Assembly: GCA_965637545.1 (NCBI GenBank)
Contig: OZ281500.1
Span: 16,616,001-16,680,000 of the forward strand
DNA: 64,000 nucleotides
Direction: 5' to 3'
Source: Phallusia mammillata
Lineage: Eukaryota
The translations under genes and the position numbers were made by a program. Under the pieces are notes generated by a model, which saw only the letters and a program-made list of their open reading frames with translations, did no database searches and was not told the origin of the DNA. The stretch's first letter is position 1. Every line of letters starts with the position of its first letter. Shown here one piece after another: positions 31,926-59,800 of the stretch.

Positions 31926-32275
31926 TTACATACAGGCATACGATATATTATATGCCGTAACTTTGAGTCCACGATATAAAAATCTCAACAGTCACGTATC
32001 TACCATGTGTGACTTGTCATTTTTGTCTGTCGAAATCAGCAAAAACCGCAGAGGGTTATGGAAATAACATCAGATACGTAAATAATACCCCTTCTTGCTG
32101 GCGCCTATGCCACAAACGTGACTTGGTGCATTAAAATTTGAATTAGTCTCTACTTTCTAAAATTTAGAAAATTGGAAAAGAAAAGGCCTACAGCTAAAAA
32201 AAAAACTCTTTTTGGAAGCTTGTTCTTTCTTTTATCTTTTTTTTACATATTGTTACCATAATTTTAAATTTCAAT

Positions 32276-32281
32276 TTTATT
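32276..32281 (-). terminator. AATAAA polyadenylation signal just after the receptor stop codon (repeated in each copy, e.g. 18330-18335)
   Basis: Minus strand reads TGA GAC AATAAA, followed by an AT-rich tract. Confidence 0.5.
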
Positions 32282-32284
32282 GTC

Positions 32285-35200
32285 TCAATAAAATGAATTA
32301 TTGTAAGAAAACAGCTTTTCTTCGTACAAGTCTACATCATCGGGTTCCAAGCCGCTGTCACTCAAGCTGCCAATCAGCGAATCAGATGACTCCACGTCAT
32401 CGGTGTCGCTCCACCTTCGTCCTGCACTAACCTCCGGTTGTGTATTTTTGCTTGAGTCTGCTTCAGGTTTCGATTTATGCTTATGACTGGATTTCTTTGA
32501 CCTCCTGCATAATTCAAACAAACTACTCAACTGCAGCATAGCGAGTGGAGAATAAACTGCATAAAATCATGAATAGATACTTCAAAATAGTGCTGTAAAC
32601 CTAGCAAAAAACGTAAATGACTACTATTCTGTTCATGCTCTAGCTAGGGCAATGCAATTTCAAACTTTGGTTTCTTTAGCAACGAAATGGGGAAAGCTAC
32701 ATATAAAACACAAAGGTGAATATATATCACTAGAGGCTACGGGCTACGCCTGAGTTGTTGCAAAACAAACTTGTGCTTTTTCTTCTTGTGTTTCTTTTTG
32801 TGATGTTGATCACTTTCTTTTGTGTCAACATCGTCTTTCAGCAGTTGCTCTTCTTCATCATTGCTGTCAACATCTTTATTTTTGATCATTGACTTCTTTA
32901 CTTCAACTTTTTTTACATTTTTTCTTCGTTTTCCCTTTTTTCGCATACACCTAAAAAAAACGGGTTTAGCAAAACGTATTAATCACAAATATAAATTTAA
33001 TTCATTTAAAATAAAAACTCAAGTAAGCATAAATGGCTTTATACTTTCCTGTTTAATAAAGATCATTGTTCTGTACAGTTCATGATCATGATCTAAAAAT
33101 CGCTCATTGTACTTTGCCCTATTTAATCAGAGCGTCAAAAACAGATTTAGCCTTAACAATAGTTTTGTACAAAATCAAATAACATAACATAATACCAGCT
33201 ACAGACACTACAAAATGTGATCAGGATTAATAGAAGACAAGCAACTGATCCAACAATGATTAAGATGGCCCCGGTTTCTGTTACACCCGCGGAGTCCCGG
33301 ATGTACGTGATAATGCTATAAACTCCACCTGGGTTGAGAATGTCTGTAAAAAAAAACTAGAATTTTAGAAACCAAAAACTACTAAATATAACTTCGTTGC
33401 AAGTAAACATATATGACCTGCACCGTTACGTACAAGTATTAGCAAGAAACTATGTTTAGAATTATTTAAAAATGCAATGTATATTCCTTGTTGCAAGCGA
33501 TAAAATACTAAATGTTATTTGAACAAAGCTCGTAAATCCTGTATACTCAGGTGAGCTACTCCCATAGGCCGTTACAAAACTTTTCTAAATACCGATTGAT
33601 CGGGTAAACTGTAAAGAGTACAGGTATTTATCTTAACCGTGAGACTGGAATTGGGCAAGAATTAAATGTAAGATTGGGGCCTTTATAAGTTGGGTTTATT
33701 TTTTAATGTAAAACCTTACCCATACCCTAATAGCCCTAACCGTCATGATTTGCTTTTAAATACTCAAAAATATTCACCTATCGGCATTTAGCAAACTTTA
33801 TCTCTAGTGAGTTTATAAGTTAAAAGAAATATAGAATTTCCGTTATCACGAGGAAAAACACAATTAAAAATGTTTTGGTTTAAATTTACTTTTACAGTCA
33901 CATCGCCACACATCGAAAAGCATCTCAAAATTGGGACCAAATAGCAGGAGCCAGTTGTCCAATGCTTGACTCAACACAAAAAGCACTTACTACCATTGAG
34001 CACAGAAACCACGTGATTGATCAGCAACCAATGGGATAGGCCTTCCGATATAACGCATGAGTAAACACCAGACAGATCTCTGCTGCCCTGCGCAGTTGGT
34101 ATGAGGAAAAGCCGACTTCTTATATACGTGGAAGTGTATTCGATACGGTGTCGAAAAAAGGGATGCCCCTTCAGCTAAACAATGAAAAAAACGTAAAAAC
34201 TCAAATCAGTTTGCGAATTACGGGTAGGTGGCGCAAAGAGCATTAACTAATATTTTTAAGCAAAGTTGTGTGAGTTAGCTGACGATTGGAGTTGGGGTGA
34301 GGTTTGATAATAGAAATGACATTAAAACTAACTTAGTTCTTAACCTTTAATTCAGTTCCTTATTCTTTACCCCTTCTGTCGGAATTTCGCTAACTTTTGT
34401 GGTTTAAGTCCCACGTTAATAGCACTAATTGCAATAAACGTGGTATAAAATGCATTTGTTCCTGCAGTAATATTCTATGGTTTCGTGTATTGTTTGGTGT
34501 AAAAATCCTAGCGATACTTTTTTAGAAACATTAAAACTAAAAAAAACTTTTTCCTAACCAGTAAAGAGAAAATCAAAACGCACGCTTCGATCTACAGTAC
34601 ACGAATGGTCAATATTTCATTCCACATAAGTAATAGTTACAAAAATACATGTTCTTTGCTTTACTGTGCTACGTTTTTATACAAGTAAAAAACGTTACCT
34701 CTACGTCATCCTTGTACCACGTGATATTTGGTGACTCCGTTACGTCATAAGAGATCGGTACAAGGCAAAAAAGTTCACGAAACTCATCACGTTTAGCTGT
34801 ACTTTTGTTCCCCAAAACATCTCTGTCGAAGCTGAAATCTCCTTCGCCCTTGTAGGTGGGTTTGAAGTACCAAGACTTCCACGTGACTGCATGGATACAA
34901 AATTTTGTTTTCAATTGTTGCAAGAACCATTTTTACTTTTACGCCTAAAATATGTAGGATTATGATGGTCCTTTGCCCGAAAATAATGGTTCCCTTGACT
35001 GAACATTCCTATCTGGCCCAAAGTGGAAAGATGTGTACGCAACTGGTTGTTGTGGGGCATGAAACAGGCTCAAAAAATGTCAAACACACCTCTTATAAAA
35101 TATGCGACCCGTAAGAACTTTCACGCGACTAAAGTTTGAATCACGACGTATAATTTGGCAAAAAAACTGAGCTAAAGAACAACATTTAAATAGTACATTC

Positions 35201-38200
35201 ATTTTTGTGTTTATGCTCTGTGATAACATAATAGCGCATAAGACACGAGGTATTAAATACGATTCAAATAAATTTCAAATAAAAGTTCTAGGAAGACATC
35301 TAAACGATGATTGTTATTTAGCGGAAATAAAGGAAGTTTATTTGCTTATTGGACCCGAACAAAATAAAAGTTTACATATTTCTGGGGTTGGGAATTATAA
35401 CCTGGATTGGTGAAGAATTTAGATGCTGGCATTCCCTTTAAGTTGAATGGAACCACGTGATCATCCAACTTCTCTACTTGATTCTGCTTTAAACTGAACA
35501 CGTATCCATGGTAACCGTCAGCGTGGCGCTCTGTAGCGCCATCTTTCGCATGTTCAGCCCCTTCGAAGAGATTCTAAACGGATGTGTGCTTTAGTAAATA
35601 GATAATTAGCAACATATTTTGGCTTTTTTCAGTGTTTTGAGTACTATTTACGTCTGTACGTTTTTCACGTAAAAAATATTGCCACAGCTAATTTAGAAAA
35701 GAATACAATACAAATTCGGTATTTTGTAAGATTGGCCAAATTACATGGTCTAAGACTAAGTCTAATCGGTTCGACTTTAACTTGTGTAGTTCTCGTGGTT
35801 TATCAGATTTTGTACAGTTACCTTTTCCGCTCCACCGAGGAGAATAATAGGTTCAGGTTTATTTTCTTTTGTTATTAAACCAAACTTTTCTTCCATTAGT
35901 TTGCCGTCGTTTGCCCGTAGCCTGACCGTGCCATCCCTGCCAGAATTATAATATGTTCAGTCTATGTAACAAATAATCCACAAAACTAGCGAATCGAGTT
36001 CCACATATATATATCTTATTTCATTAACAGGATGGTTTTATCCTACTGGCCGATTCAAAGAAAAAAGTACCCTGACGTTTTTCTAGCACACTAATACCAC
36101 AAAAGTGTCACAAAAAGTTTGTTAAAAAGTTTCTTGATGACAATATGTTTCTAGCGTACATGCGTAAAATTCTGAAAATAATATGTTAACAGTTATGTTT
36201 ATAACTGTTAATTAGAAGTATAATCATCACCTGTATACCTTGGCTGATAAACATTGCTTACATCCAGTGGTTGGCAACCGCCTGTCCGCGGTCCGGTGCC
36301 GGTTCGCGAGTAGTTCGTTACCGGACGGGTTGCCGACCCCTGACTAACATAATAATGCGGAAATACAGTACTAGTCAAGAAACTTCTCACCAACACAGGT
36401 GCTACCTTTCTCCTTTACATATCTAGTTTAGGTTTAGCCTTTAAATTTTAAAGTCCACCAAAAAACAAATACCTCAAGAGCTGTAGGAACAATCTGTTCC
36501 AACGACGCAATGTAACAGATGCGTCGCTGTAAATTGATTTCACCGTTCCCCCGGTGGTTAAAATGAATCGCAGCGTCGTTCCATTTTCGATGAGAAGTTT
36601 CATGTGTGATGCTAAGTTGTGCTCACCTGCACAAAACAAAAAATAACATTTGGAGAGCGTCAACTCGATTCAAATCGACCTAATTTCCTAGATATTTATG
36701 CATTTCGCACCACAGTAACTATCAGAAGGATTTAAATGGAGAAAAGGCATTGAAGTTTAAACAAGATACTGTGACTATTTTAATGTTTCATTAAATTGAT
36801 GTGTCATTATACCTCGAGCATGTTTAACAGATGCTAAATTCCTAATTGTATGACGTCAGTTGGAAACAAAGTGACATTGACCTCTGATAAAGAAGATAAT
36901 TCCATCTCCTACTGTTGGCTTGAAAATCATTTCAAGGGTAGCTACGTCACGACGATCGACGTCACTGGCTGACATGACGTCGCCGGGATCGTAGACCTCA
37001 CCAGGGTTGCTCCACCACACCATGGAAAGAGGAAATCGCATTCTAGATTGTAAAATAATAAAAAGTGTAAAATGTGCTTTAAAATAGTGATTTCAGGGAT
37101 TTCATGGAGTACTTTTTTAAAATGTAAACAACAACATTAATTTTGAAAATTAAAATAATAATAAATAATAAAAAAACTGTTTGTTTTTCAAGACCATCGC
37201 CAATTCAAAAAATAATGCATTTTTTGTACTGAATCCCAGGGGCGTATCCAGAAATTTTTAAAGGGGGGGGTCCAACAATGTTTTTGGGGGAAATCCCCAA
37301 TGACGTCACACGTCGTTCAAAACGACGCGTTATGCGGCAAAGCACTTTTTCCAAAATTGGCGGTTTCTCTACCCATCTAATTGACAGGAAGAACAGGTAA
37401 TTTTAGCAAAAGCTTTGTAGTTTTCTGATTTCGCCGCTGCTATCTAGCTTACTCAGCCAAACTGCAACTGCAAAATAAGCGTGACTGTCAGGTAATCAAA
37501 ATCGTTGCTTAAAAAAACAGGGTCCAATTTCTAAAGAACTAAATCTCTTGCTGAAGCGGTAATCCTACTGTTAAGTTGCGCAAAGTCACGAATGCACTAA
37601 AGGTGGTAACTGCAGAAGGCATAAATTGTGCCTGGCAAGTAACAAATTACCCTAATAACATAACTCGATTTACATCGATCTAATGTTTTTGACAAACTAT
37701 TACGTGTTTGGCGGATCAAAGCAACACAACATTACACGTTTTCAACACTTTTACATTGTTCAAATGCAAAAACAGTTTGATATGTTGCACTTAGTGCAGT
37801 TACCATTTAGCAAGAAACTGCTATCAGCGTCCTAGCCGGAACGTAACTTTCCGATTGTTAGCGCATAAACCTCCTTATTAAACCCTTGTTACGTCACAAT
37901 TGGCGATTAGATAACAAGCGAATACAAGAGATTGAAGGCTCACGTCTTTGAGATAACGACTCCCTGTTATCACGCAGTGGTAAACGGAACGATTTTGGCC
38001 TATTTAATTTACGCACAACTTTTTGAAAAGGGGGGGGGGGGGGGTCCGGACCCCCAAACCCCCCCCTTGGATACGCCACTGCTGAATCCCAACTCTTCAT
38101 GTGCATTATTGCCCCAAGGCCCACTTGGAAAATTAACTGCTTTGAAACTACACTTGATTTCAAAATTGATTTTTGCGGCAAATCATTAAAGTGTTGGTAT

Positions 38201-44200: not shown

Positions 44201-46747
44201 TGCCCAAATGATTTCAAAACACACCATATACCGTTAGCTTGGTAAGTTAGTTTTAAACACTTTTATATTCGGGTTTTTTCACAATCTCCGAATGATTGTA
44301 AAAATAATCCCGCCTATTTTGCCCGGCAAATTTTATAGAAATATTATCTAACTGAATGCTTTGCTTGTAGTTCAAAAATTTCATACGTTGTTAAGCACCA
44401 TGTGAATGGAGGTATTTGTTCGCACTAGAAACGAATGTTGATTTCCAAAACAAGCAGTTGAACCAGTCAAGTGGCTCCGCACGTGGGTTGCTTATGGTGA
44501 GTGTTTCATCTGTTGTGTGCAAACAGGTTTGCCGCCTCCACATGACATTTAAGGGGGGTGCACGATTCTATGGCTCCCTGCATCACTGAACATGCTTTTT
44601 GAGTAAATTAATGGAAAGGATTAAATTAAGGTCCCGTGAGGACAAACATAAATCTCATTGGATGAACTTAAACGTTTGCTGCTTCGTGCAATTTTCAAGA
44701 TTTTGACCAAAATAATAAAAAATGTATTTTCGTCTCCCACCCCTTGTTGAGTTCGCCAATAATAGATGAATCATTTTAAACTTCTGGCGTTTGTCAAATT
44801 TCGTGGAAAGCATGTACGTAATTTGACAGTTTTGTTTTTCTTCGTGTATTTGTGTTAACAGTCGGCTACTGTGAAATAATATAATTGTAAAGCGTTGAAT
44901 AAAATAAAAGTTAAAGTACAGCAGCAGTTATCTTTGACTATCGGTATATTGGTTTTGTGATATTTTTAAGGTTAACACAGGGTATACATTTCATGTGTAT
45001 CATTAGTTTGATCTTTTTTGGCTCTATTACAACTTCTATCATTATCAAAGGTAGTCCGCAAGCTTTTGCTCTTGACCCGACTTTACCGACCACCAAGCAC
45101 GTACAAACGTTAGCTTCATGTCACAACACAGCACTATTATCGTTGAAAATCCGGAAACCCTATAACGTTACGCCGGTACACAAAACTTAAGCGCATGGGT
45201 TAAGCGTGAGCGGCAGGTTTCAACAGCACCGATAAAAACAACTTCAAAAAAACCTTAAAATAAAGCAAACGCTACCGTGTTCGGTTCCCCGCACGCACAT
45301 GGGCATTGGAACAGAGCAATTTTGCAGGGATGGCGTGATCAGCGATCCATATACGCCACTCAGAATCAATTAGACACGTAACTATGGGTAACGGACAGGG
45401 TTCAGTGCGCTATCAGCAACTTGTCTTGCTAACGAGGCAAGTGAATGCCAAGGTGACGACCCTGGAACAATGCTAAAGCGTTCTGTTTCAAAACAAGGCT
45501 TTGCGATTGGCCACTATAACACTTACCCTGCGGTCGCGGGGTTACTCGAGGTCATCCCACCGCGATGCGATGGATTGACGGTTTAAATTCCTCAGCGTTT
45601 TGTTTTGTTTCGCAGAGGAAAAACGAGAATGTTTTTGCGTGAACTTTAACCTTTTCCTTGCGAGAAATGTTTTTGTGCATATGTCAGCAATATTGACTGT
45701 CATGTTATGTCACTGCGCAAGAATCACAATCAATCATATTTCTTGATGCATGTTAACGGAAAAGATCCTGAGAACGTTTGGGTTCATAAATGCGTGTGGC
45801 CTACTTTTTTAGCGGCTTAAACTGGCAACAGCAGCATTCGCTTCTACAACAGTAACGGGTGTCAATCGGCATTTTGACAACGGCATTAACGTACCGTTTC
45901 TTCTAGGTCTCCAATAATTGCATGAGCATCGTCGAATTTGCATTGGTGAGTGAAACACTGTCGCTCCAATTCCGGTGAAGAGGCCATATGAAACCGCTGG
46001 AGGGCGCGATCCGCACGTTGGTTCGTGGTCAGATCCTCCAGGTCAGCTGCAACGACTGCAACAGAAAAATTACATAGACATAAGTGGAAATAAAAGAGGC
46101 AAATATATATGCCCCATCACTTCATTTGGTGATAAAATAAATCGTTCAGCATCTGGACCTATAAGGCTAAAAATTTAGTCACTAACAGAACTGACACAGC
46201 GAGTTATTTACTCCATACGGATTAAGTTAAACAAACAACAATCTATCACAAACGGGTACTTTGGTAGAGCATATATATAACCTTACAGTTTAAGGTTCCC
46301 AAGCCAAACGAGCACTTTATTCCGCAGAGCACGTTTGAGGTAAAACTAAGAAAAAATTCTTCCGGTCGAAGCTTAAACTTGAGCCTATAACGAAGATAAA
46401 GCGCTGTGCAATTGTTTTACGTTTTGCGGCTGATTTGTGCAAACTTTCTGCCCCAGTCGAGAGTCAAATAACCGAGTTTTACCCAAACCGCACCAAGCAA
46501 GGTTATCCTGTCGAGCTTAGACAAATGAACCATAGAAAAATGTGCAAGAATGGTCTGGTGCTGGTGCTGGGTTTCAGTGTTCTCATTTCAACACAAATGC
46601 TAGGTTGCTTGCTTGCTATTTACCTTCATCAACAATGCTGCGTTTGGTAATTCGTCTTTCAAATGCCCGCCCACTTGCAGTCGAGAAAACGATGACGCAG
46701 CATAATCCAATAAGCTGAGTTATAGAGATGGATCGATGGTGATGCAT
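32285..46747 (-). CDS. Type I membrane protein: signal peptide - degenerate Gla - 3x TSP1 - 2x laminin G - Ig - TM - basic/acidic tail, 18 coding exons, about 1067 aa
   Basis: Exons (minus): 46747-46624 (MHHHRSISITQLIGLCCVIVFSTASG signal, RITKR), 46055-45895 (LERQCFTHQCKFDDAHAIIGDLEET), 43945-43903, 43403-43230 (WLPWLEWQPCSATCGAG), 41813-41631 (WGQWGAWSACDEPCG), 39913-39737 (WEPWSRCMVSTCGGGMRIRLRDC), 39518-39187, 39022-38710, 38420-38246, 37042-36882, 36626-36473, 35936-35822 (IILLGG), 35573-35402 (GYHGYVFSL), 34886-34699 (LFC...ITWYKD), 34174-33991 (DLSGVYSC), 33343-33196 (TM AILIIVGSVACLLLILITFC), 32950-32771, 32504-32285. All phases match; 3204 nt, open. Donors at 38245, 36881, 35401 and 32770 are GT but weak, so these boundaries are less certain. 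Confidence 0.85.
36265..36342. mobile_element. 78-bp hAT-type mini-MITE (array copy 4)
   Basis: Same element, with one extra TIR mismatch (GTTGGC instead of GTCGGC). Confidence 0.7.
37237..38081. mobile_element. Non-autonomous hAT-type DNA transposon, 845 bp, intronic
   Basis: 14-bp TIRs CAGGGGCGTATCCA / TGGATACGCCACTG (1 mismatch); perfect 8-bp TSD CTGAATCC at 37229-37236 and 38082-38089; subterminal poly-G/poly-C tracts. Confidence 0.9.
39990..40120 (+). mobile_element. Penelope-like element pLTR/3'-end relic
   Basis: TATATAAA, then the hammerhead core, then AATAAA, the usual layout of PLE pseudo-LTRs. No RT or GIY-YIG ORF nearby. Boundaries approximate. Confidence 0.45.
40037..40091 (+). 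ncRNA. Minimal type I hammerhead ribozyme motif (Penelope-like element type)
   Basis: CTGATGA 40046-40052; extra T; stem II GACAA / TTGTC around loop TAGTT; GAAA 40069-40072; palindromic stem III AAACGTTT; triplet GTT; stem I ACA/TGT plus CATTTT/AAAATG. Confidence 0.65.
40990..41304. mobile_element. Degenerate hAT-type MITE with TGGCACG subterminal repeats
   Basis: Left end CAGGAGTCGGCAAC, right end GTTGACGACCGCTC (degenerate TIR); several TGGCACG copies at both ends; TSD only 5 of 8. Confidence 0.55.
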
Positions 46748-49700
46748 CTGGGAAAATGCAGGTTCTTGTCTTTGTTTGGGCAAGAAAACAAGGGTATGTG
46801 GTTTACTTTCCTATAGCGGTCTAGGAACTAAGAAAACAGTTTTTCATAGATCCGTAAACAAAATGGCAAAAAATCCAATAAAACAGCAGAGGATGCTATT
46901 GGTCAATATTTAAACTACCTTCCCTGACCGACAAATCTATTCAAATTTGAGCAAAAATATAAAACAACAGTGGTTTTGTTTGCGGCTATAAGACGGCGTC
47001 TACTGCTTTAAAATGAACAATTTTGATTGGGTCTGGAATTTTGTGTATCATCGTATTTGTGTAGAACGGTTTTACTGTTATGATGCTGCGGAAGTGTTAT
47101 TTTCATTCTGTACAGAACGTTTAACATAAATAGGCAAGTAAAAATTGTTTTTATTAATTTTTTTACAGACAGTCGAACGCTTGTTTTAGGAACGGATACA
47201 AGTTTTGAAACATACAAATTTCACACTTACACAACAAGCATTTGTCAATGCAAACCAAATAAGGTCGCACAGAATAATCAACATCTGAAATACGTTAGGC
47301 TAAAGTATTGGTCAGGAGCCAGAACCACCCCTTAATAACAGTCACTCCAAAGCCATTGTCAGTCATCGCGTAACAACGAACTGTCACAATGACAATTGTC
47401 ATGTAGAATGTTTTTCTAACCAGAAATAGTTCAGGCACAGCTATACTTGGGTTCCGACACTTAGGGGTCTAATCCTGATAAAGGAGAATGAATTCGTTTA
47501 AATACAAACGTGTCGCTCAAAGGGGTCAATGTTGTTGCAGTTAGGAGATTGTGGCGCTTAGGGCAACGTATAAATATTGCTTTAGACGTCGCGGGGTTAT
47601 AGTTTGTGCGCCTTAGTAGCAAAATAAACAGGGTTGAAAAAATCTAGCGTGCGGCGATAACGTACTAATAAATCAAGATTAGTGAGAGAATTCATGAATA
47701 GGCTTGACAAGAAAACAGAGTCAATTGATATTTGTCCTAAATTCCGAGTCTTTTTTTGACATCGTGGTTAAGAATGGCCTCGGGAGATTAAATGCCTTCT
47801 GAATTACACCTTATTGGTGCAACGAGTGTTTATTTGGTGCGAGCGGCTTGTGGAAAGCTAGAGCGTTTTGACAACAACCAGATAAAATTAAGCTGACAAA
47901 TAGATTGGGTTTGGTTGTTTTGGTATTCCCATAAGACCACCTGCGTGTCTGTTAATTAATCATCGCTAAAACAGAAGGTTATTTCCCTGTCATTTTGGTT
48001 TTACAGTACACAAATACAACAAAAGATTTTTCGGAATGCTACCAAAACTACACTGGTTAAATTTAAAACGTTTATTTTGCAGAACTCGACTACAAGTTAT
48101 ACAAATCATTTAACAAAAGATTATGCATCAAAAGCATTCTTCGGGCTTAAAAGTTATACATAAAAAAATGTCCTGGTCAAAATTTCTTGCTAAACAGTGG
48201 AGTGAAACAAGCAATGGCTTACCCTGCTTTCTAGGTTTGTAAATCTGAACCTAGCAGTCACTTTATCATTGCTCTTATTATACAGCTAGTTAACTCTGTA
48301 ACTACAAACTTGTAAAGGTGTAAAGATAAGCAACCCGTAACCAGCACTTTTTACTTCTTATCTTTTCTAACAGCATTCAAATATTATCCCATGAGGTAAG
48401 TGAAAATCGCAAATTTGTTACATTAACGCTTTATAAATAAGTTTATTAGCACTGATTGTTGTTTTGCCCATCAATAATTTGTACATGAATGTGCAGCGTC
48501 AAATGTAAGTTACGTCACATTTAAGCACTTGCTCAAAATATGGCTACGTGCAGTTCCAGAAGGTAAGTTTACAAAAAAATGCACATGCACATTCCTAGTG
48601 AAGTAATTGCACGGAGAAGCCAAACCCTAATGCGTTTGTAATTTCAAAACTTCGTCTTGTTTGCCTTGAAAATGCCACCCAGTTATGTAATGGGGTCGTG
48701 CGAAACATTTCGACAACAGTTTCAAGTTCTGGCCGTTTTCGCAAACTTGCAACTAAAAGAACACAAAACTGCTTTTACCCTATCTCCCTGCGCCGGAGGT
48801 CCCGACTGCACTGTTGACAGAGGTTACGGTTAAATTAGCAAGCGGATTTGGTTCTCCAAAGTTAGTGAACTGTTGACTGCCTGACAGTGCGTCTAGCTGA
48901 CTGCCAAATAACTGCCCGCCACAAAAATATTTCACCACGTCATTTTGACTCCTCACTTGTACTCATGTACGACTGTTCGTTTCTTAACTTAAAATAGAAC
49001 AACACATCTCATATGCAGTTAGCCGCACTAACAGGTAGACCAGCAATTACTCTGTCTTTAGGCTAAGGCGCCCATTGTCATGTTGTATGTGTTTGTTTTG
49101 TAACAATTACAGATTGTCTTGTTTATTGTAAATATATATTTACATGTAGCTTGGTGCCCCATTTCATATTTCAATTTATGTAAACCTATATAGCATGATA
49201 TAACTGCTTAAGTATTTTTTGTAATTTTGTATTCAACTTGGTGTTTTTGACTTCTGGCTTTACTTGCGGAACCTAAAGTCGCACCAACAGTTCAATTATT
49301 TCAGGATTTTTATTAAAAGAGACGCAACAGCTAACCTAAAAAATGCGGAAACGTGAAAAAATACAATAAGAAATGTGCAGAACGCCTTAAATCAAACAAC
49401 ACACAACAAAAAATCAGAAAATTGACAAGCCACAAGGAACTTTGCACTGGTCGAGTGCCGGCTTTGTCGGTAATGTTTTCATGGAAAACGTCGTGCAGAG
49501 CAAAATATGTGCACAAGAAAATAAAGATTGTCAAACTAAAATCCGAACGTTTTGCATACCGGTGATTTTCTATGCAAGCTACTGGTGTCAAAGACATCTA
49601 TGAGTGTTTGTGTGTGGCAATCAGAATAGCTGCAAAAATTGGCAATTGCAAATCTACCGTGTAACATGCGAAAGACAAGTGTGATGTGATTTAATTTAAC

Positions 49701-49949
49701 TAACGATAGTGGATAAAAAATAAAAACCGATACTTCGCTGCATATGTTTTTTGTGGGCTGTTGTATACGTGGATTGAGGTATAAAACACAAAAGGCATCA
49801 ACGCCAAGGTGTCTCTAACATTGTATAGATAAACTATGAAAACTAAAACAAAATCTAAAACCGTCTTTGACCTCCATTAACCCTCTTCTCATGGAGTAAC
49901 GACACTCTGTAGCCCATTAGGAGTCACTATGACCTCATTGGATGACACA

Positions 49950-52900
49950 TCATCGCTTCTCGGTGACGTCAAACGATGACGTCACAATGGCTATTATAGC
50001 AAGGGTGAAGAGAAGCAAGATATTACAGTTTACTCTTGAACCACTTCCAGTATCGCCACGTAGTGGACTTTGTGATCCTGTTGGGATGCTGAGATCTGAT
50101 AGGTAAACTAGAAGGGAACCGCTCGTGGTACTTTCTTTGGTGCTAATTGTTGTTGTGGTGGTTGTTGTTTTTGTTTTTTTTGTAAGGACTGACGTCTGAG
50201 TTGTGACTGGAGTTGTAGTAGAAACCGTTTTCTTCTGGTTGTGAGTCTTGCCGACTTCAATTGTAAGATATGTCGCTGTTCCGGAGTCAGCAAGAGCCGC
50301 GAGCTTTTTTCCAAAATCTAAGCTGACCATCAGGGAGATAGTATGGGTTCCTGAACATAAAAACAAGGTCATGTTATTGCAACAGTGTAAATATTTTCTC
50401 AACACAGCGAAATTTTCGGCTTAAACATTAATATCACGACTACAAAGTGATATACACTAAAAATAGGCATAATCGCAAATCGGGTATAACGTATTTGTGA
50501 TTGTCGCAAATTGGCAGGATGGGCCTTCGCCAAATCGGGTTTATCGAAATTGTGCAGGCGACGACAAACTTAAATATTTCATCTCGTTATCTTGCCACAG
50601 TATTTCATTTCGACCGGCAGTGCACAATCTTTCTATTTTCGTCAAAACAAGACAATTGGGAGAGAATTGAGATCGACAAAAACAGATTGTTCTGCTGTAT
50701 TAAGTATTTTGTCACTATTTGATGACGCAATGCTGAATTCTTGTTTCCACACAGTCGTATTGTTTGTACTTGATATTTAATGCAGTTTTTGGTGTAAAAA
50801 TGTGCCGGTTTTTAGTTTAGGTCAGGTTGGCGAGAGGCATTGGTGGTTGTTTTGTCGCAGAGGAAGTAGCATGGGAAAGTTAGACACTTAAACTGTAACG
50901 CAATGACTTCAAATCAACCGTGACTTCCTGGCGACGCGCGAGCTTAAAACCGTCAGCGAAATAAACGAACATTCCATCCCGACATGTTGGCTTTCAGGTA
51001 CGGGTTGGGACCCAAAGTATCGCGTTGCTAAAAAATCAACAACAGAACACTACCATCGGTCGGATAGTTGTTTGCTTATTGTTGGTGCACGTTGGATTAA
51101 AACGAGAATATATTTTAATTTTGGCTCGGATCCTGGCTATGATTTCGGACCTCTTAAGGTTAGAGATAATTGTATAGCTCGCGCTGACACTATCGACCTT
51201 CAGATACGCAGAAGCTTTAGTTTCTTCACAGTATCAAGTTCCGAAGCATAATTACCACTTGCAGAACACGATTTTGGCGGTTTAGTGTAGGTTAGACGCT
51301 TGACACAGGAATGTTGCATAAACCAGCACCTCTGTTTTTTGTTCAAATCACGATCAAAGAGCTTAAGTATTTTCACATTAAAGCCTACAAATTTCTCCAT
51401 ACGCCCAACCCGTCAAATAGCGAAATTAGATGCAGAGATTGAGGACATTTTGATCGACGTAATGGTTTGTTTGTGTAGCGATGCGATTGCATGGCATCCA
51501 TTATAACCAGCGCCCAATACGACTCAAGGCGTGCTCTGTGCGTGAAAAGTAATGCACTATCCTTGTAAACTGTCAATTTTGATAAGATCTCAGTCTACAA
51601 AGGGCATAGATGGACTTACAATCTTGGCGTAACTGTCATAGCCATGTAGCACGTGTTTATATGAAATGACATGCTAGCGGGAAATAAAGGCAAAGTTCAA
51701 AATTCCGTTCGGGATTAAACTTTTACCGCTTAGTTACCCGTTAAGATCGCTTTACCGCACAGGCCCTTGAAGATCTCACGAGGCTTAAAAAGGCCCCACT
51801 AAAAACGCGTTTATATGTTCCTTTTTAAGACCAATTAACTTCATGCTAGTTTTATAAAATATTTTAGGTCACAATGAGGGACAGAAACTTTTACAAATTA
51901 AAACCAACTCGCTAGGTTTTTAAACGGAATACGATTAAGAAGGGTCACAGGCTGAATTGGATACAAGGACGCGAGAACACACAGAAAACTGCATGTAGGT
52001 CTAAACAAGTTTGACATTTCCGCAGCGTATTGTTAACCAGACCAGGAATCAAAGTGCACGATTTTAAGCTGTACAAAACCTTCGAAAGCGCAGCAGGTAA
52101 TTGTAGCTTTGTCAGGTTTACGTAGTTTGAGCAGAGGACGCTTGCCATTCGAAATGATCCAGTAATTTCAGGCTTGGAGGGCTTACGAAGCGGTGCGCAT
52201 CAAAGCGGCACCTTGGCGCATCAATCATTGCAATGCAGAAGACCGTAAATAATCAGCTACAGTCGAGAACTTCAGCATGTAACTCCGTTAAAACTTTAAC
52301 AAAGGATTTAGGTTCGATGGGTTGGGCAAAGACATGCGTACATGGTTGGTCATCAGTCATACTTGGACAGGCGCCAATTATCATTTCATAGCAAAGCTCG
52401 TAATTTCACAACAGTCGACCTCGAAATGGCAAAGGTCAATGGTTTGGCATCCAGCGCGTTAGTGTTTACAGTTACTTCTTTGCTAATTTTGAAGCATTTT
52501 TACCGCTATTTTACTATACAGCAAGAGGTGATACATTGGTTGGGATTTGGAAAACAAACAGAAACCAATTTAGACGTGTCGAAGTCGATTGATAAATGAA
52601 GAAGAATGCTCACTTTCGTGGATCAAAATTCGTAACCGCATTTTTGTGTAAGCCGCGAAACGCAGATAAGGCGTAACCTAAGTGCAGGCAAATCAATTAC
52701 AAATTCAAGTCATTTTCAACAATGTCCCAGATTTGAAAGCTTACAGTGCCACAGTTTACACTGGAAAAATTCCTACTTCCCACTATGTGTTCCCCGTGAT
52801 AATCTTAACTTGGTCTACATCCCTTTTGCGCTTATGTGTCCTTTCCGTCCACTTATAGCGGCATCCGTCTTAAAAAGTCAACGCTTATCCGAATAAATCC

Positions 52901-55900
52901 ACAAGCATATGCCGCTTCGGCGTCCGTTTCCCGGTCACGTGACCAAAGTATCACGTGACCAAAGCGACTTTGTGACGCTCACTTTGTTGAGTGTACACAG
53001 CAACAAACGCGTTGAACAAACAAACGTGTTTCCATCAAACGGCAGCGCGCGCCCGGCGACAACTTTAATCCGCTACTTCGCTTTCCCTCTCAAACAAACA
53101 AGCAACCCCTCAAAAATCACTGTGACGTCACAATGAAAGGCGACACGTGCGCTGGATGTTTCGACTTTTAAGTGTTTTCGATTTTAGCTGAATGAAAACG
53201 AGGCGAGACGACCAGGCGGGAGAAGAGTGGTGGACAGCGACTCAAGTTGGTTGCCAAGTGTTGTCCCGTATTACCAATGGACGAAAACGATCTGGAATGT
53301 GATCCATAGTAAAAATTGCGCCCGAGTTTGATGGCAATCCTATATACGAAATATCGCTGAAAACATTTACCCTCCGGTGACAAAAATTATACTCATTATC
53401 CACAACAATAAATTCCACTTTTTCGTTCGTCATTGATATGTTTCCGTGTTTTTGTTTATAACGTTGCCACTTTCCTTTAACCGCTACGTCACCATGGATA
53501 AGAGATGAAATTTAAATGCGATGTTTCGCACATAGCAATTACTGAATGCCGAATTTTTATGTTAACCTTTTGCTTCATGCCAAAACAATACTGTTATAAT
53601 GCCCAAGTCGCTTCCTATTCGTAACTGATAATATTCAAGAAATGTGCCAAATTAAGACAGTAATTAACATCCGCCATTTTGAACGCCCATGGTAGAATAC
53701 TAAAATCGCAAAAATGTCGGTAGCGCTTTAAACATGATAAATTACCCCTTTTAAATTAACCAATAAACAACACATGCGAGCCCGCGTGACATTCATATAG
53801 CCCTCGCACTCTGCAAAGGTCACAACTGTGGTCATCCAATGAGGTCTCGCCCTCATGTCACGTGGCCCCAAATGCCTTTTGCATTGTGCCGTTATGATTG
53901 TTTCGTCATGATGGAACGCCTTTTATGACCGGCAATAAAACTTGCGCGCGACGCAATCGGTTGCCCGGGGTGATGTTGTGACGTAGGTGTCGAAAATGTA
54001 CCGCCTTTGTTCAAAATCTATTCTTAAAGGCGGTTTTTCAAGGGAAAAGACAACATGTATTCTGATTTTGTTTTGCTTGTTAGATTGCTAAGTTAATTCG
54101 GCTTTTGTATTAAAACTTCAAATTGAAAAAAACTTCGACCCAAAACAAAAACAGGCTTAAGCGCGTTTTGTTCCATTTGACCCCCGCGTTTCAGCAGGAC
54201 AGTACTTAACAGGACAAACGATACAGGTGTGAAAGCAAGCGCGATAATCATCTCACAAGACAACCAGCCTCCCGCAAGCTGAACAATGGATGCAATAAAG
54301 GCAGTTTGCACTCGCCAAAGCGGTCTCGCTGACCAATCGGGACCGGACAGTATTTTGTTTGAACTTTTGTCAACACCTGAAGCGGGTTTTGTTTGAAGTC
54401 GGGACATCTCAGATCCCACGAGCGTAGGTTACACTGGAAGGGATGACACCTGCCACAAATATGATTGACAAAGTGCCACTGCTTGTCAAGGGCGGTTGTG
54501 ACAGCTGTCACTTTTTGAAAGGCTGGCACTATTTTTGGAAACCGAAAGGAGTCTTACACATTGCCAATTTTTTTATTTGAAAAAAAAACGCAACTTTTGT
54601 TTCGAAGCCAAATGCTACTCAAATACAATTTTTTACAATTTCGGGTGAATTATTTGGCATTTTACTTATTGTCGATTTTTTAGCGTAAGCTGATCGGGGT
54701 CATGAACATATTTGAGGCGAATTATCATCGATGCTGTTTGGTGCGTCATACTCGAAACCCTACACCAGGATCGTCACGCTCGAATGCGTTGCACGAGAAC
54801 TCCGTGCATAGATTGATTAACAAGACATGTGTTGGAAAGCATCAAAACAAGCCCCAATACTTTATGCACTAAACTTGGCAAAATTTGTCAGAGGGCATAT
54901 TTACTCGCTCACTAATGTAACTTCAAAACCCAAACTACACAAAAATCGTTATGTTGCGAAATAATAGGCCAGCATAAGTTTGTTTTTGTTCAAATAATTT
55001 GTTATAAAAGAGCGTTAAAGAGGGGCGTTCGAACCTAACTACACTCGCACCATGAGAATAATCTCATAGTTTCAGTGGACCATATATATGTCCACAGTAA
55101 TTATACGCCCTATTTTCACACCGTCGCAAGACTTGCGAAATCAAATCTTTGTGTGTATAACGCCATTGACAGCAGAGTGATGTGAAGAAAAGACAAATAT
55201 GTGCTTACTGCCGTCGCGTTAAAACAAGGGGCGCTGGGCTATCTGTAATCAAACTGCTAATGACCGACGACACGAAACCGACACATTTACGTGACCCACA
55301 GAAGACAATGGGTGATTATGCGCGCACAGACGCCTCATCAGCATTACGTCATGTTTGCCATTGCCACCGAGCGCAGCAGAGCGTAACCGCGGAGTCTTTA
55401 CGCATGAATGATCTGCAAAATTTTCGGGTAATCAGCGATTCGACTTAAAACGTTCAAAGAAAGGTTGGCCTTGCCAATAATCTGCTCAGCTACTGTACAT
55501 AAAAGGCTAAGCGAAGTTTAAAAGATCAAAGGGGATAATTTTAAACACAAACAACTTCCATTGGCTTGCACGGCACCAACTGCTAAACAGAAAAGCCATT
55601 ACGCAAGAAATAGTTTTGTCATTTTTCGGCTGATAATGGATACAATATCACCTTGTCAATAGAAAGTCGCTTATTTTTACGTATTTCTATCCTCGAGTAT
55701 ACGACCGACAAAGTAAGCATGATTCATGTTATCAGGTGGCGAAACGGTCTTCATTACTAAACAACAGTTCTCAACGCCTTTTCACGTTCGCATCAGCAGT
55801 AATGAGAAGTTTCAGGCGAGCGACATTTTACACGCTGCCTTATAAATATTGGGTGGTCGCCGAATAATATGATATAAATCCGAATGACGTGTTTTCTGTT

Positions 55901-56823
55901 TTTAGCGAGTAGTTTAGTCTGCAAGGTAGCAAGGAACGGGCTCGGTTGTCTGGAAACAGGTTTTCTTTTTAGATTTTACCGGTTTAAGAAGAGTGACAGT
56001 TGCCAGGCAACTTTATACACGCCTGGGATATAAACACATCAAAACCGGTTGCGGAAATCAGTCTGTATTAACAAGGGATTTTTCAGCTCAGGGTTTACTT
56101 CTTTCACCGTATTGTGGAATGGCATAGTGAAACAATTTTAGCAATACTTTGCCAATCCCTATAGTCTTACATTTGGATCCGTTTTCGGTCCTAAACTATG
56201 CTATAGAAGTCCAAGAACAATAAAAAGAAAACAAATGTCTTACCGATAGTGTTCATGACTTGAATCTTTCCATCCTGGTCATCGTAGATCACCACTGCGC
56301 TTGCTTGGTATCTCTCTCCAAGCTTGATCTTGTTGAAGAAATAGCACCTGCCTCGCTTGATCAACGCAATCCACGGCTCGTCCCTGGGAATTTCCATTTC
56401 ATTTTTAATCGAATGTGCGCAGCCTAAATTCGACGACCTTCCGGGATCGGCGACATGGACCACTTTGCCTCGGACCATCTCAGTAGGCGAGTGAAACCCA
56501 AACTTTCCAGTGGTACGCAGTTTTATTTCGTCGGACGCATCAGGTGTCATATGTGCATGCAAGTGAGCGTCGGTCCATGCTGGGGGATTATTAGGATCTG
56601 GTACAGTTTCAGTGGCGACTGATGGTGATTTTCGCATAAGAGCATCAAGAAAAATCTTGTCATTCACTGGATCGCGCTGGTCTCGTCGCTTTCCGCCGCG
56701 TCCCCGGTGCCGCCTTTTGCGTTTGCGGGCTTCCGTGCATGAATTTTCGGCGCACACTACAAGGATGATCACGATCGACCAGCTGATGAAACGGACGATA
56801 TTGAGCAAATTCAAAGTAGTCAT
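49950..56823 (-). CDS. Goliath/GRAIL (RNF130/RNF149/RNF150-family) PA-domain protein lacking the RING; Thr-rich stalk and hydrophobic C-terminus; 2 exons, about 326 aa
   Basis: Exon 1 56823-56244: signal peptide, then PA motif GCAHS...PWIALIKRGRCYFFNKIKLGERYQASAVVIYD, ending at a phase-1 GTAAG donor. Exon 2 50350-49950 follows acceptor TTTTTATGTTCAG and completes the PA domain (GTHTISLMVSLDFGKKLAALADSGTATYLTIEVG), then a Thr-rich tract, GSGS, ILLLFTLAIIAIV and a stop. 981 nt, open. Confidence 0.85.
52933..53132. promoter_or_regulatory. E-box (CLEAR-like) pair plus palindromic CRE; candidate intronic enhancer or promoter
   Basis: GGTCACGTGACC 52933-52944; TCACGTGACCAAAG directly repeated at 52935 and 52951; TGTGACGTCACA 53121-53132; locally CpG-rich. 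Confidence 0.4.
55925..56011. promoter_or_regulatory. Cluster of RFX X-box motifs in intron 1 of the PA-domain gene
   Basis: GTTGCCAGGCAAC (55999-56011, perfect inverted half-sites), GTTGTCTGGAAAC (55945-55957) and a weaker GTAGCAAGGAAC near 55926. Confidence 0.5.
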
Positions 56824-59800
56824 TTTCACTGTTGCAGTTTTTTGATTAATTATAAAATTTAAAGTCTAAAAACAAAACAAATTTGACTTAAAACAGAAAT
56901 AAAGTAACCACAATAGCAACAAATTGACACTGGCATTTAATCTGTCATAATCTCACTCTTCAGAAAGTTTCTGCCAGAAACTGTCGCTAAGACTAAACTT
57001 CAGACATCTCATAAAACAGAACTACTAAACTCTTTATTTCTAAACCTGACAAAATACAAAACCCAGCTTGGGAGTTTTCTGTACAAAACGCGTCTCGCGA
57101 ATAACAACAGCACAGCGTATTTGACTGGACCGTAGACAAGCGAAGCAACTTCTTGACGTCTCGACCGTTTCAGCTTTTTTCTCATAGCGTCCAGCGTTTC
57201 GAGAAGGCCTTGTCTGATAACAGCGCCGAGGGACCAATTGCAGCGAAATGTTGTAAGTTGTAAGGTTGAATACAATGGACAACCCATGTCACGGATTAAA
57301 TGCGTATTTACAACGGATGGAGACTACAGTGTTTACAAAAAACGCTTAAAAGCGTCGTTTTTAACAAACATCAAATTTAAATTGAGAAAATACGTATTAT
57401 GACCAATCTTTGCCACCAATTATTTACCGCGATAGTACCGTTTACAAAAGTCTACTTTCTTAGGTTAAGATTTTACTGTTTCGTAAAAATATACAATAAC
57501 TGTACATGCAGATTGCAACACTAGTTATGACAAGTCACAAGCTGCTTGCGATTCTTATACGCCAGGGGAGTTCTACTTTTGTTATCAGTTTGAACGCAAT
57601 CTTGACCTCGTAGTTTGGTAGATAATTTTCGATCTAAATTTTTTTAGATTCCGGCGTGCCATTGTCCGCATAGTAATACTATAATATCAGCTGATAACTT
57701 GGTGTGATTAAAACCGATGCTTTTACAGTAATTTCCAGAGGCGCAAACATGTTTTTTTAAACTAATTATTTTATGCTACTACGTTTTTAGCTGTAAATTC
57801 TAATTTTCATTTTCAAATAATATTTTCCGCATGGTTTAAACTAGGCTAATAAGAACTTTTAGATTATGCCGCCATTAGGTGTTACTCAAATAGTCTAAAA
57901 CAATTTCCGCATTAACACCTTGACCAAGAGGATGAAACACACGTTTTAAGCTTCCTCCTGTCTCCAGCCGGGCCATCTTCCGCATTAACTCTTTTGACTC
58001 TTAGGTCCAACACCTATATCCCGCTGTTTTTTCGTGCAGCAGTTTGACGCAACAAAGGCATATTGTTTTAGCGAACATCCTGTCCCCGCGAACCTACCCA
58101 TGCGAGTCGGCAAATTGCGTTAAAACTGGCGTGCTTGCGCAGCTCAGGCGGACAGACAAATTCAATTATATCCTACCAAGTTCGATGGTGCGAAACGGTT
58201 GACTACCGTCTTTACATCAACGAGTGTTCAAATCGCTAAAATCAAGCAACAAACAACTAAAACACAAACTGCAATACATACTGATTCTGGTAATACTGAA
58301 TTATTATTTCCAGCACTTATTTTGATCAAATGAGGCGTCGTCAGAGGACACAATGTTCAACATTCATGCGTCGACTGTCAGAACAAATAAAATAAACTGA
58401 CCAGTAAGCTTCATTAGCAAAACATGTTTTATTTTCCTTAGTTGTGTTACCTAAACACGTCTGTTTTCCTGACAGGTCACGAATCTGTGAATGGTAAAGA
58501 CGACGGTTGGGGAGCAGTTATACTCCACAACTTTTTTCTTCCCCAGCCGTTATCTTCGCGACGTGTGACGTCGCGCGTTCGCCGTCCAATTAGCTTCAAC
58601 AATAACTTCACGAATCACGAAGCGAAAAAAATCCTAGGTCGCCGAGTTTTGTTTTCAAAACAGAGTCTCTAAAAACAACATCGGTTGCTTTTTGTCACAT
58701 TTATGCGCATTAGTCCTGTCACAGTTATTTGTTGATCTTTTTCTCAGATACATATGGCTAAAATGCCAAATTTTCCTTGTTTTCACCAAACCTATTTTTC
58801 AATAATTTCAGTCATGCCTAAAAAAAATTATTACTTTAGTTACAAAAACGCAAATTTGAAAAAATCCTGTATACGTACACATGTTGTTCTAAGTTGTTTT
58901 TGTACTTATCATAGCATATAAAATGAGATTTGATGTTTCATATTTCTCAGAGCCAAAGCCTTTCAAACAAGACTTTCCTTCCATCCTACGCATAACATTC
59001 CCATTGTTGACGAACTTCAGAGACCTTGCAAACACATCTAGGCACTTTTTGTGGTTGTTGAACAAATAAACAAACTTATCGTCGCAATTGAAACTGCGCA
59101 GTGCATCTTAAAACGAATTTTACGGGGTCAGAAGGTAAATGTCAGATCTGTAAATCTGTCCTTGGGCATTCTATTCCGAAATCGAGCCCAAACGAGGTCT
59201 GTGAAACAATTTGGCGGTCAGTGACCCTGGAGTAAAAAATGGAGACGTAGCGTTGGGTCAATACCTCGGGCACTAAAATTGTTTGCTCGTTAGTTTTACT
59301 TCAACTCCTGGTGAGCGGAAATGTCTGAATAAGCAAAGTTCATAGATTTGCAACTGTTAAATATCGTCGTATCTTAAACTATGTTTTTCATTGAACTATG
59401 TTAACATGCAACTTAGGGGCAGTCGGAAACATTCATGACAGTGTACTGAACCGCCCGCATACCTGGGTGGCCTTCTGTTAAGCTAAGTCTAGAGTAAACT
59501 TGCAAACCATATGTGGTGAAAGTAAAGGGTGCAAAATGACATAAGGGCATCAAGGGTTTGACCTTTCGACATTGGGCCACAAAGTTACAGCAAGCATCTG
59601 TCGTTGTTATCACGGACAAGTTTTGAGCGAGCACTAATTGGCTTAACTTCGTTCCGGTTTGCTTGTTACCACACGCAGTTGCTTGAATTTGGCAACAACT
59701 GTACGCATTAACCCCTTCTGAACGATAAGTTGGTGCATCCTGTTTAATGATATTCTTTACAAAAAGAAATATAACTCTCTAACGTCAAAAGCAAAGTAGC

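What the first reader, a model, noticed from the sequence alone, without database searches (positions are those of the whole stretch)
49950..56823. RING-less, probably GPI-anchored member of the Goliath/GRAIL PA-domain family
Known: RNF128/130/149/150 and Drosophila Goliath are PA-TM-RING E3 ligases, with the PA end followed closely by the TM, the RING downstream, and (from memory) an intron at this PA position. Seen: after TYLTIEVGKTH the exon runs into a Thr-rich stalk (STTTPVTTQTS...KTTTTTTTIST), then GDTGSGS, a short spacer, ILLLFTLAIIAIV and a stop 10 codons later. I found no RING-H2 exon between 49950 and the next gene at 46747. Inference: a surface-displayed PA domain uncoupled from ubiquitination, acting as a decoy or sequestering receptor, analogous to how decoys could oppose RNF43/ZNRF3-type PA ligases.
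Basis: partly seen in the sequence, partly recalled or inferred. Interest (0 to 1): 0.8.

Follow-up and report, generated by a model that had tools for sequence, protein, structure and literature searches.

The report
Sea-squirt Pen-1: known RING-less PA protein
This is the Phallusia mammillata copy of the ascidian gene Pen-1/Rnf149-r, a membrane-tethered relative of the Goliath/GRAIL ubiquitin ligases that has lost its ligase (RING) part; that loss was published for Ciona in 2023, so the only new point is its probable lipid (GPI) anchor.

Summary
A two-exon minus-strand gene (56823-56244 and 50350-49950) encodes 326 aa: signal peptide, polybasic stretch, GRAIL-type PA domain, Thr-rich disordered stalk, and a 17-residue apolar tail six residues before the stop.

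Spliced contigs from three studies join the two exons. They run through the stop into a ~650-nt 3'UTR that ends just after an AATAAA, and no splice leaves exon 2. No RING-H2 is found in any frame of the window.

The gene is not new.
- Its product is already deposited as Phallusia "RNF150 (PEN-1)".
- It is the orthologue of Ciona Rnf149-r/Pen-1 (KH.C2.994): same intron, same neighbouring gene, and the paper's guide RNAs map to the Ciona orthologue.
- Vitrinel et al. 2023 described Rnf149-r as a PA protein lacking the RING. They proposed it is a natural dominant-negative of Rnf150, and their CRISPR tests did not support that.

An intact PA-TM-RING paralogue lies ~640 kb away.

The anchor reading is new but untested. 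Phallusia, two Ciona species and Styela all have a small-residue motif, a spacer and a 14-18-residue apolar tail near the C-terminus. I put GPI at about 55-60%, against a minimal-tail transmembrane anchor.

Already known; low interest.

The parts
56244..56823 (-). Exon 1 (CDS, 580 nt, aa 1-193 plus 1 nt). It encodes the signal peptide (aa ~1-25, 56823-56749), a polybasic stretch (aa 33-48) and the first ~115 residues of the PA domain (from aa ~80, 56586 downward). The donor is ATC G|gtaaga.
   Evidence: the loose ends carry the reverse complement of its last 30 nt
50351..56243 (-). Intron of 5.9 kb, phase 1, after V-M-N-T-I. The same place and phase occur in Ciona Rnf149-r, in both Styela PA repeats and in the Phallusia PA-TM-RING paralogue.
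50235..50350 (-). Start of exon 2: the last strands of the PA domain (aa 194-232), ending IEVGKTHN. This aligns with IEVGKKHG of RNF128.
50049..50234 (-). Thr-rich stalk, predicted disordered (aa 233-294). It is largely a Phallusia-specific insertion relative to Ciona.
   Evidence: pLDDT ~30
50037..50048 (-). G-S-G-S (aa 295-298), a candidate GPI omega-site region. It is conserved as GSGS in both Ciona species.
49971..50021 (-). C-terminal apolar run of 17 aa (aa 304-320; mean Kyte-Doolittle 2.56). It is either a GPI-signal tail or a short membrane anchor.
49950..49970 (-). Last six codons (DVTEKR) and the TGA stop.
49295..49949 (-). 3'UTR of ~650 nt. AATAAA lies at 49314-49309, and the contigs end at 49295-49351.
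52571..53291 (-). Alternative exon inside the intron (acceptor ag at 53293-53292), joined to the end of exon 1 in one run only. It reads 16 codons and then a stop, giving a 209-aa product with an incomplete PA domain.

Best explanation
The locus is the Phallusia mammillata orthologue of ascidian Pen-1/Rnf149-r. This is an old, conserved, RING-less offshoot of the Goliath/GRAIL (RNF128/130/149/150) PA-TM-RING family.

Shown: It encodes an N-terminal signal-like segment, a GRAIL-type PA domain, a disordered Thr-rich stalk and a short C-terminal apolar segment. No RING exists in the locus or in the transcripts.

Inferred: the protein enters the secretory pathway. Its PA domain faces the lumen or the cell exterior, held on an O-glycosylated stalk. 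It is tethered by its C-terminus with at most 3-10 residues in the cytosol, most likely through a GPI anchor added at the conserved GSGS region (about 55-60%), otherwise as a minimal-tail type I anchor. With no cytosolic effector, it can act only by binding a partner through the PA domain (capturing, presenting or competing for it), not by ubiquitinating anything. That partner is unknown.

In Ciona the orthologue is needed for pharyngeal-muscle fate, and it does not act through Rnf150 (published).
For: Identity:
- Exon 1 is 100% identical to P0001, 'RING finger protein 150 (PEN-1)' of Phallusia mammillata. The spliced CDS equals P0001 at 325 of 326 residues.

Transcripts:
- The X1 and X5 contigs run uninterrupted from 50351 down to 49295 or 49320. 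X9 covers the same span apart from a skipped repeat at 50138-50186.
- All three then run on into the end of exon 1. There are no joints out of exon 2, and depth is zero between 47670 and 49295.

Orthology with Ciona Rnf149-r:
- P0004 is the best Ciona hit.
- Both published sgRNAs for KH.C2.994 map in its first exon.
- The two-exon structure is the same.
- The LamG/TSP1 gene is the colinear downstream neighbour.

Family:
- The RNF128 PA domain is the best PDB match by sequence (E 1.4e-5) and by fold (E 4.5e-12, against 5.6e-8 for the next).
- The nearest Atlas clusters are RNF130.
- The only PA paralogue found in the genome is a PA-TM-RING-H2 gene with the same intron place and phase.

No RING. 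Styela and both Ciona orthologues also have PA as their only Pfam domain.

Topology:
- The model has a confident PA domain at 80-232 (pLDDT mostly 87-95, with a dip to ~59-71 around aa 121-140), a disordered stalk at 236-301 and a terminal helix at 302-325.
- There is a conserved Cys pair in each PA domain, and 4-6 N-glycosylation sequons in the Ciona and Styela orthologues.
- The C-terminal apolar run is 14-18 aa in four species, against 26 aa for the paralogue's TM. Small-residue triplets lie 5-9 residues upstream.

Published function and RING-less status: PMC10219245.
Against: - No GPI predictor or experiment was available. The Phallusia tail has four charged residues (DVTEKR) after the apolar run, which is unusual for GPI signals (my knowledge of GPI signals, not tested).
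- The signal peptide was judged from hydrophobicity only.
- The strongly basic stretch just after the N-terminal hydrophobic segment could in principle affect orientation.
- Phallusia itself has no N-glycosylation sequon, so luminal exposure is inferred from the orthologues and from the mucin-like stalk.
- The runs are labelled 'RNA?' by guess, although contigs without the intron can only come from spliced RNA. Contigs can hide rare isoforms.
- No binding partner is known.
Confidence: 0.85

Rival explanations
1. Same gene and same topology, but anchored as a type I transmembrane protein with a 3-10-residue cytosolic tail rather than by GPI. It might be kept in the ER or Golgi by its short membrane span.
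For: The apolar run plus neighbours can make a 19-20-residue helix, and AF2 models a helix at 302-325. Charged residues (DVTEKR, NER, NKR) follow the run like a stop-transfer signal. The ancestral family is TM-anchored (paralogue).
Against: The strictly apolar run is only 14-18 aa, against 26 aa in the paralogue's TM. There is a Gln in its middle in both Ciona species. Styela has no basic residue after it (HFHSH). The GSGS motif 5-9 residues upstream is conserved while the rest of the stalk is not.
Confidence: 0.4
2. One reading: the PA-only protein sequesters the substrate or ligand of the RING-bearing paralogue (Rnf150-like) and so opposes its ubiquitin-ligase action.
For: A PA-TM-RING paralogue with 39% identity over the matched PA stretch exists on the same chromosome. 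The architecture fits a competitor with no catalytic part.
Against: In Ciona, loss of Rnf150 gave no overt phenotype and did not rescue loss of Rnf149-r. The authors therefore ruled Rnf150 out as mediator (PMC10219245). The PA domains have diverged strongly, and the PEN-1 clade has its own invariant motifs such as WTEA, GKFGxHS and KCYFFNKIKL.
Confidence: 0.12
3. The gene is a decaying truncated duplicate (a pseudogene in the making), or the model misses downstream RING exons.
For: An alternative acceptor in the intron gives a truncated product in one run. The family normally carries a RING.
Against: The open frame, the intron and the C-terminal signal are conserved across Phallusia, two Ciona species and Styela. 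Exon contig depth is 216-343 in one run. There is a loss-of-function phenotype in Ciona (PMC10219245). No RING is found in six frames, and contigs end after a poly(A) signal.
Confidence: 0.03

Closest known systems
Ciona Rnf149-r / Pen-1 (KH.C2.994; Vitrinel, Vogel and Christiaen 2023, PMC10219245; Pen-1 postplasmic RNA of Yamada et al. 2005, as cited there)
   Same: It is the orthologue. Over the 193 residues of exon 1 it is 40% identical, and 35% over the full length. Both genes have two exons with the intron at the same codon and phase, and the same downstream neighbour. Both have PA as their only Pfam domain, no RING, a GSGS motif and an apolar C-terminus.
   Different: Phallusia has a ~35-residue Thr-rich insertion in the stalk, no N-glycosylation sequon, and a longer charged tail after the apolar run. 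The paper does not discuss a signal peptide, membrane anchoring or topology.
Goliath/GRAIL family E3 ligases (RNF128, RNF130, RNF149, RNF150; Drosophila Goliath)
   Same: Signal peptide and a PA domain of the same subtype. RNF128 (3ICU) is the best match by sequence and fold, down to the IEVGK-H end motif. The PA intron is shared with the Phallusia PA-TM-RING paralogue.
   Different: No RING-H2 and no cytosolic region. A 60-70-residue stalk lies between the PA domain and the membrane segment, and that segment is a 17-residue apolar tail rather than a ~25-residue TM. It cannot be an E3 ligase.
PRADC1 / PAP21 (secreted PA-domain-only protein; from my own knowledge, and listed as a separate Ciona gene KH.C4.37 in Table S3 of PMC10219245)
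   Same: A PA domain with no catalytic or RING partner in a secretory-pathway protein.
   Different: It is a different PA lineage, since Ciona has its own PRADC1. To my knowledge PRADC1 is soluble and has no C-terminal anchor. The nearest relatives of the protein here are RNF128 and RNF130.
RNF43/ZNRF3 ectodomains (PA-like fold that binds R-spondin)
   Same: A PA-fold ectodomain used for binding an extracellular ligand. They appear among the fold matches at E ~1e-6.
   Different: Much weaker matches than GRAIL (11-17% identity). They keep their RING. No known link to this gene.

Membership tests
Goliath/GRAIL PA-TM-RING E3 ligases | PA domain of the GRAIL subtype | tested here: met
   Pfam PA E 1.2e-6. 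3icu RNF128 is the best PDB sequence hit at 1.4e-5 and the best fold hit at 4.5e-12. The top five Atlas structural rows are chordate PA+RING clusters, four of them named RNF130.
Goliath/GRAIL PA-TM-RING E3 ligases | Gene structure shared with bona fide members | tested here: met
   The phase-1 intron lies four codons after the conserved Met (VMNTI+1 nt). The PA-TM-RING paralogue at G000:C7:17.31 Mb has it at IMSHE+1 nt.
Goliath/GRAIL PA-TM-RING E3 ligases | Transmembrane helix soon after the PA domain, followed by a cytosolic region | tested here: not met
   About 70 residues of disordered stalk come first, then a 17-aa apolar run and six residues to the stop. The paralogue has a 26-aa TM followed by a basic cytosolic sequence.
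Goliath/GRAIL PA-TM-RING E3 ligases | RING-H2 finger (catalytic) | tested here: not met
   No PF13639 hit in the window at E<=10. No RING core regex hit in six frames of 46000-57500. Transcripts end in exon 2.
Ascidian Pen-1 / Rnf149-r orthologue group | Closest similarity to Ciona KH.C2.994 | tested here: met
   P0004 and P0003 are the top Ciona hits. The published sgRNAs for KH.C2.994 map at L002 8291-8309 (0 mismatches) and 8122-8140 (1 mismatch), inside exon 1 of P0004's gene.
Ascidian Pen-1 / Rnf149-r orthologue group | Conserved exon structure and neighbourhood | tested here: met
   Ciona has two exons split at the same codon. The downstream same-strand LamG/TSP1 gene is colinear with window 46014-33204.
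Ascidian Pen-1 / Rnf149-r orthologue group | Maternal mRNA localised to the posterior (postplasmic/PEM) | not testable with these tools
   Only the database name '(PEN-1)' for P0001 and the statement in PMC10219245 that cites Yamada et al. 2005.
GPI-anchored proteins | N-terminal signal peptide | tested here: inconclusive
   Apolar core at aa 9-23 (mean KD 2.59) followed by VCA|EN. No dedicated predictor was run.
GPI-anchored proteins | Small omega, omega+2 residues and a 5-10-residue spacer before the apolar tail | tested here: met
   GSG or SGS with a 5-6-residue spacer in Phallusia, 4-9 in Ciona, and 7-12 (GYS, SKG, GVS) in Styela. This is a rule-of-thumb scan only.
GPI-anchored proteins | Moderately apolar tail that reaches (nearly) the C-terminus, with no cytosolic domain | tested here: inconclusive
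   The runs are 14-18 aa, followed by 3-6 residues. These residues are charged in Phallusia (DVTEKR) and Ciona (NER, NKR) and uncharged in Styela (HFHSH).
GPI-anchored proteins | Lipid anchor shown biochemically | not testable with these tools
   Needs PI-PLC release or Triton X-114 partitioning.
PRADC1-type secreted PA-only proteins | Soluble, with no membrane anchor; own PA lineage | tested here: not met
   A C-terminal apolar anchor is present. The nearest relatives are RNF128 and RNF130. Ciona has a separate PRADC1 gene.

The most novel reading that the evidence does not exclude
Pen-1/Rnf149-r is a GPI-anchored, mucin-stalked cell-surface PA domain with no cytosolic part. On this reading the Ciona heart-versus-pharyngeal-muscle phenotype would come from capture or presentation of an extracellular ligand at the membrane. 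That would be a new signalling input acting in parallel to FGF/MAPK, not any ubiquitin- or Raf-related cytosolic action as the name and the 2023 paper's starting hypothesis suggest.
Probability: 0.35. Interest if true: 0.5.

Novelty: already known. Interest (0 to 1): 0.2.

Why it matters
The gene matters in ascidian development. Its mRNA is a maternal posterior-localised RNA, and in Ciona its loss shifts pharyngeal-muscle precursors towards heart fate.

This check adds a topological argument. The protein has a signal-like N-terminus, a stalk and a GPI-like or minimal C-terminal anchor in four ascidians, so its PA domain should face outward or into the lumen, with nothing in the cytosol. That narrows the search for its partner to extracellular or luminal proteins. 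It also argues against the cytosolic (Raf/MAPK) mechanisms considered in the paper.

As a discovery of a RING-less Goliath relative it is not new.

Tried and rejected
- My first splice join used 50349 as the first base of exon 2 and broke the frame. The right acceptor gives 50350.
- The word-based protein search found only ascidian relatives and no vertebrate RNFs, so I built no PA-domain phylogeny. Family placement rests on PDB, fold, Atlas and intron evidence instead.
- I did not run the exhaustive protein search, because the family was not left open. I therefore make no claim that the RING-less clade is confined to tunicates.
- A fifth orthologue fragment (P0006, JGI metagenome contig L008) has exon 1, but I found no exon 2 within 10 kb downstream. 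It adds nothing on the C-terminus.
I chose exon 2 with its flanks, and the junction is read from the loose ends.
- I could not fix the exon that carries the PA end in the paralogue without transcripts. I therefore do not claim that the stalk arose by read-through of a former intron.
- Literature searches for a GPI-anchored PA protein of this family found nothing relevant.
- No complex prediction was run, because no partner is proposed.
Full report
**What is there.** The window is G000:C7:16616001-16680000 of a 240-Mb genome. On the minus strand an ATG at 56823 opens a 580-nt exon that ends ...ATC G|gtaaga at 56244. After a 5.9-kb intron, the acceptor ttcag| gives a second exon from 50350 to the TGA at 49952-49950. 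Joined, the two exons give 981 nt and 326 aa. My first attempt was off by one base at the acceptor.

The product has these parts, in order:
- an apolar N-terminal segment followed by VCA|EN;
- a polybasic stretch, aa 33-48;
- a PA domain (Pfam PF02225, E 1.2e-6 on exon 1 alone);
- the motif IEVGKTHN;
- a Thr-rich stretch;
- GDTGSGS, a five-residue spacer, a 17-residue apolar run, and DVTEKR before the stop.

**It is a deposited, named gene.** The word search returned a 326-aa protein, P0001, 100% identical over exon 1. UniRef/nr name it 'E3 ubiquitin-protein ligase RING finger protein 150 (PEN-1)' of Phallusia mammillata. The spliced translation differs from it only at T255K, inside the Thr run. 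The organism is therefore the ascidian Phallusia mammillata.

**Transcript evidence.** I laid contigs of four runs from four studies on 47400-53399.
- In X1 and X5, single contigs of 1656 and 1677 nt cover 49295/49320-50351 without a gap. They then run on with the reverse complement of the last bases of exon 1.
- X9 shows the same loose end.
- A contig that lacks the 5.9-kb intron can only come from spliced RNA, so the guessed 'RNA?' label is borne out.
- The contigs pass the stop and end at 49295-49351, just beyond an AATAAA at 49314.
- No joint leaves exon 2, including at the GTGACG near 49985. Nothing is laid between 47670 and 49295.

Exon 2 is therefore the terminal exon, with a ~650-nt 3'UTR. 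Contigs can miss rare isoforms, so this shows the main form only.

One run (X12) joins the end of exon 1 to an acceptor inside the intron, with ag at 53293-53292. That exon reads 16 codons and then a stop, giving a 209-aa product with an incomplete PA domain and no RING.

**No RING.**
- A six-frame search of the whole assembly with zf-RING_2 gave 112 matches at E<=10. None falls in the window. The nearest on this contig are about 440 kb and 600 kb away.
- A regular expression for the RING core found nothing in any frame of 46000-57500.

**Family.**
- The best PDB sequence match is the PA domain of RNF128/GRAIL (3icu, E 1.4e-5). The alignment runs from the strand before the Pfam-defined domain to IEVGKTHN against IEVGKKHG.
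- An AlphaFold model built on an eight-row ascidian alignment is confident for residues 80-232 (pLDDT mostly 87-95, with a dip to ~59-71 around aa 121-140). It is disordered for 236-301 (~30) and has a helix at 302-325.
- Its best Foldseek match is again 3icu, at E 4.5e-12, against 5.6e-8 for the next match, an aminopeptidase.
- The nearest structural clusters in the ESM Atlas are chordate RNF130.
- Within the genome, the only other place matching the PA domain is at C7:17314499.
- There I read the exons of a gene with a signal peptide, a PA domain, a 26-residue TM and a split RING-H2. The RING hits lie at 17319223 and 17319774.
- Its PA intron lies after IMSHE plus one base. That is the same codon position and phase as VMNTI plus one base here.

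The protein is therefore a derivative of the Goliath/GRAIL lineage. It fails two defining features of that family: the RING, and a TM followed by a cytosolic region. It should not be called an E3 ligase.

**Orthology and what is already published.** The closest proteins are from Ciona intestinalis (P0004, 314 aa), C. savignyi (P0005, 307 aa) and Styela clava (P0007, 482 aa, with two tandem PA domains). PA is the only Pfam domain in all of them.

A literature search for Pen-1 led to Vitrinel, Vogel and Christiaen 2023 (PMC10219245). According to that paper:
- Ciona Rnf149-r (KH.C2.994) 'also encodes the postplasmic RNA known as Pen-1';
[quoted passage not shown] - loss of Rnf150 neither gave a phenotype nor rescued loss of Rnf149-r;
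- loss of Rnf149-r impairs pharyngeal-muscle specification in parallel to FGF/MAPK.

I tied P0004 to that gene directly.
- Both sgRNA sequences from the paper's Table S4 map inside exon 1 of P0004's gene in the Ciona chromosome, with 0 and 1 mismatch.
- The Ciona gene has the same two exons split at the same codon. Each Styela PA repeat ends at the same intron.
- In Ciona the next gene on the same strand carries TSP1 and laminin-G domains. Its exons match window 46014-33204 colinearly.

Orthology is therefore well supported, and the RING-less state predates the split between Phallusia, Ciona and Styela.

**The anchor.** The 2023 paper does not mention a signal peptide, a transmembrane segment or GPI (zero occurrences). 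This part is new, but it is inference only.
- Across the four species the stalk is poorly conserved, and the Thr run is a Phallusia insertion.
- Each protein nevertheless ends with a cluster of small residues (GSGS in Phallusia and both Ciona species; GVS, SKG or GYS in Styela).
- A spacer of about 5-9 residues follows, then an apolar run of 14-18 residues, then 3-6 final residues.
- The paralogue's true TM is 26 residues long and is followed by a basic cytosolic sequence.
- This pattern fits the usual description of a GPI attachment signal (my knowledge of omega-site rules, not a predictor).
- Against it, Phallusia has four charged residues after the apolar run, and both Ciona species end in NER or NKR. 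That could serve as a stop-transfer for a minimal-tail type I protein.

I put GPI at about 55-60%. Either way the protein has no cytosolic domain.

The following evidence favours a luminal or extracellular PA domain:
- each PA domain has a conserved cysteine pair;
- the Ciona and Styela orthologues carry 4-6 N-glycosylation sequons;
- Phallusia has none, but it has a mucin-like stalk.

**How it most likely works.**
- Shown: the architecture, the expression and the absence of a RING.
- Inferred: a membrane-tethered PA domain, facing outward or into the lumen, that acts by binding a partner.
- Published for the orthologue: a developmental requirement, and independence from Rnf150.

A cytosolic action, such as on Raf as considered in the paper, is topologically unlikely.

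**Verdict.** The finding is already known, both as a deposited Phallusia protein and as a published Ciona gene with the same 'RING-less' description. Interest is low. The modest new content is the conserved GPI-like C-terminus and its consequence for topology.

Noticed in passing
window 52571-53293 (-): In one run (X12) the end of exon 1 is joined to an acceptor inside the intron (ag at 53293-53292). The frame then reads 16 codons and a stop, giving a 209-aa product without the last PA strands. X9 also holds a 5.8-kb contig of intron sequence at about a tenth of the exon depth (unspliced RNA or DNA carry-over).
   Followed up: partly
window 56680-56727 (-), aa 33-48: A polybasic stretch lies right after the signal-like segment, with a furin-type R-K-R-R site. 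E-A-R-[KR]-R-[KN]-R is conserved in Ciona, and Styela has a similar basic stretch. It could be a convertase site or a glycosaminoglycan-binding patch.
   Followed up: no
G000:C7:17313628-17319921 (+); loci L006, L007: An intact PA-TM-RING-H2 paralogue (Rnf150-like) lies ~640 kb from Pen-1 on the same chromosome. In Ciona both genes are also on one chromosome (KH.C2.994 and KH.C2.730). The exon that carries the end of its PA domain looks short, and I could not settle it without transcripts.
   Followed up: partly
L009 10001-11893 (Styela clava, P0007): The Styela orthologue has two tandem PA domains, ~49% identical to each other. Each ends at the family's conserved intron, so an internal duplication of the PA exon occurred there.
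   Followed up: partly
window 19263-35944 (-): The last five exons of the Ciona LamG/TSP1 neighbour gene match four times in the window at a ~4.65-kb period: 19263-21966, 23910-26613, 28557-31260 and 33204-35944.
   Followed up: partly
window 50049-50234 (-): The Thr-rich stalk is about 35 residues longer than in Ciona and carries a T255K difference from the deposited cDNA-derived protein. Phallusia Pen-1 has no N-x-S/T sequon at all, whereas the Ciona and Styela orthologues have 4-6.
   Followed up: partly
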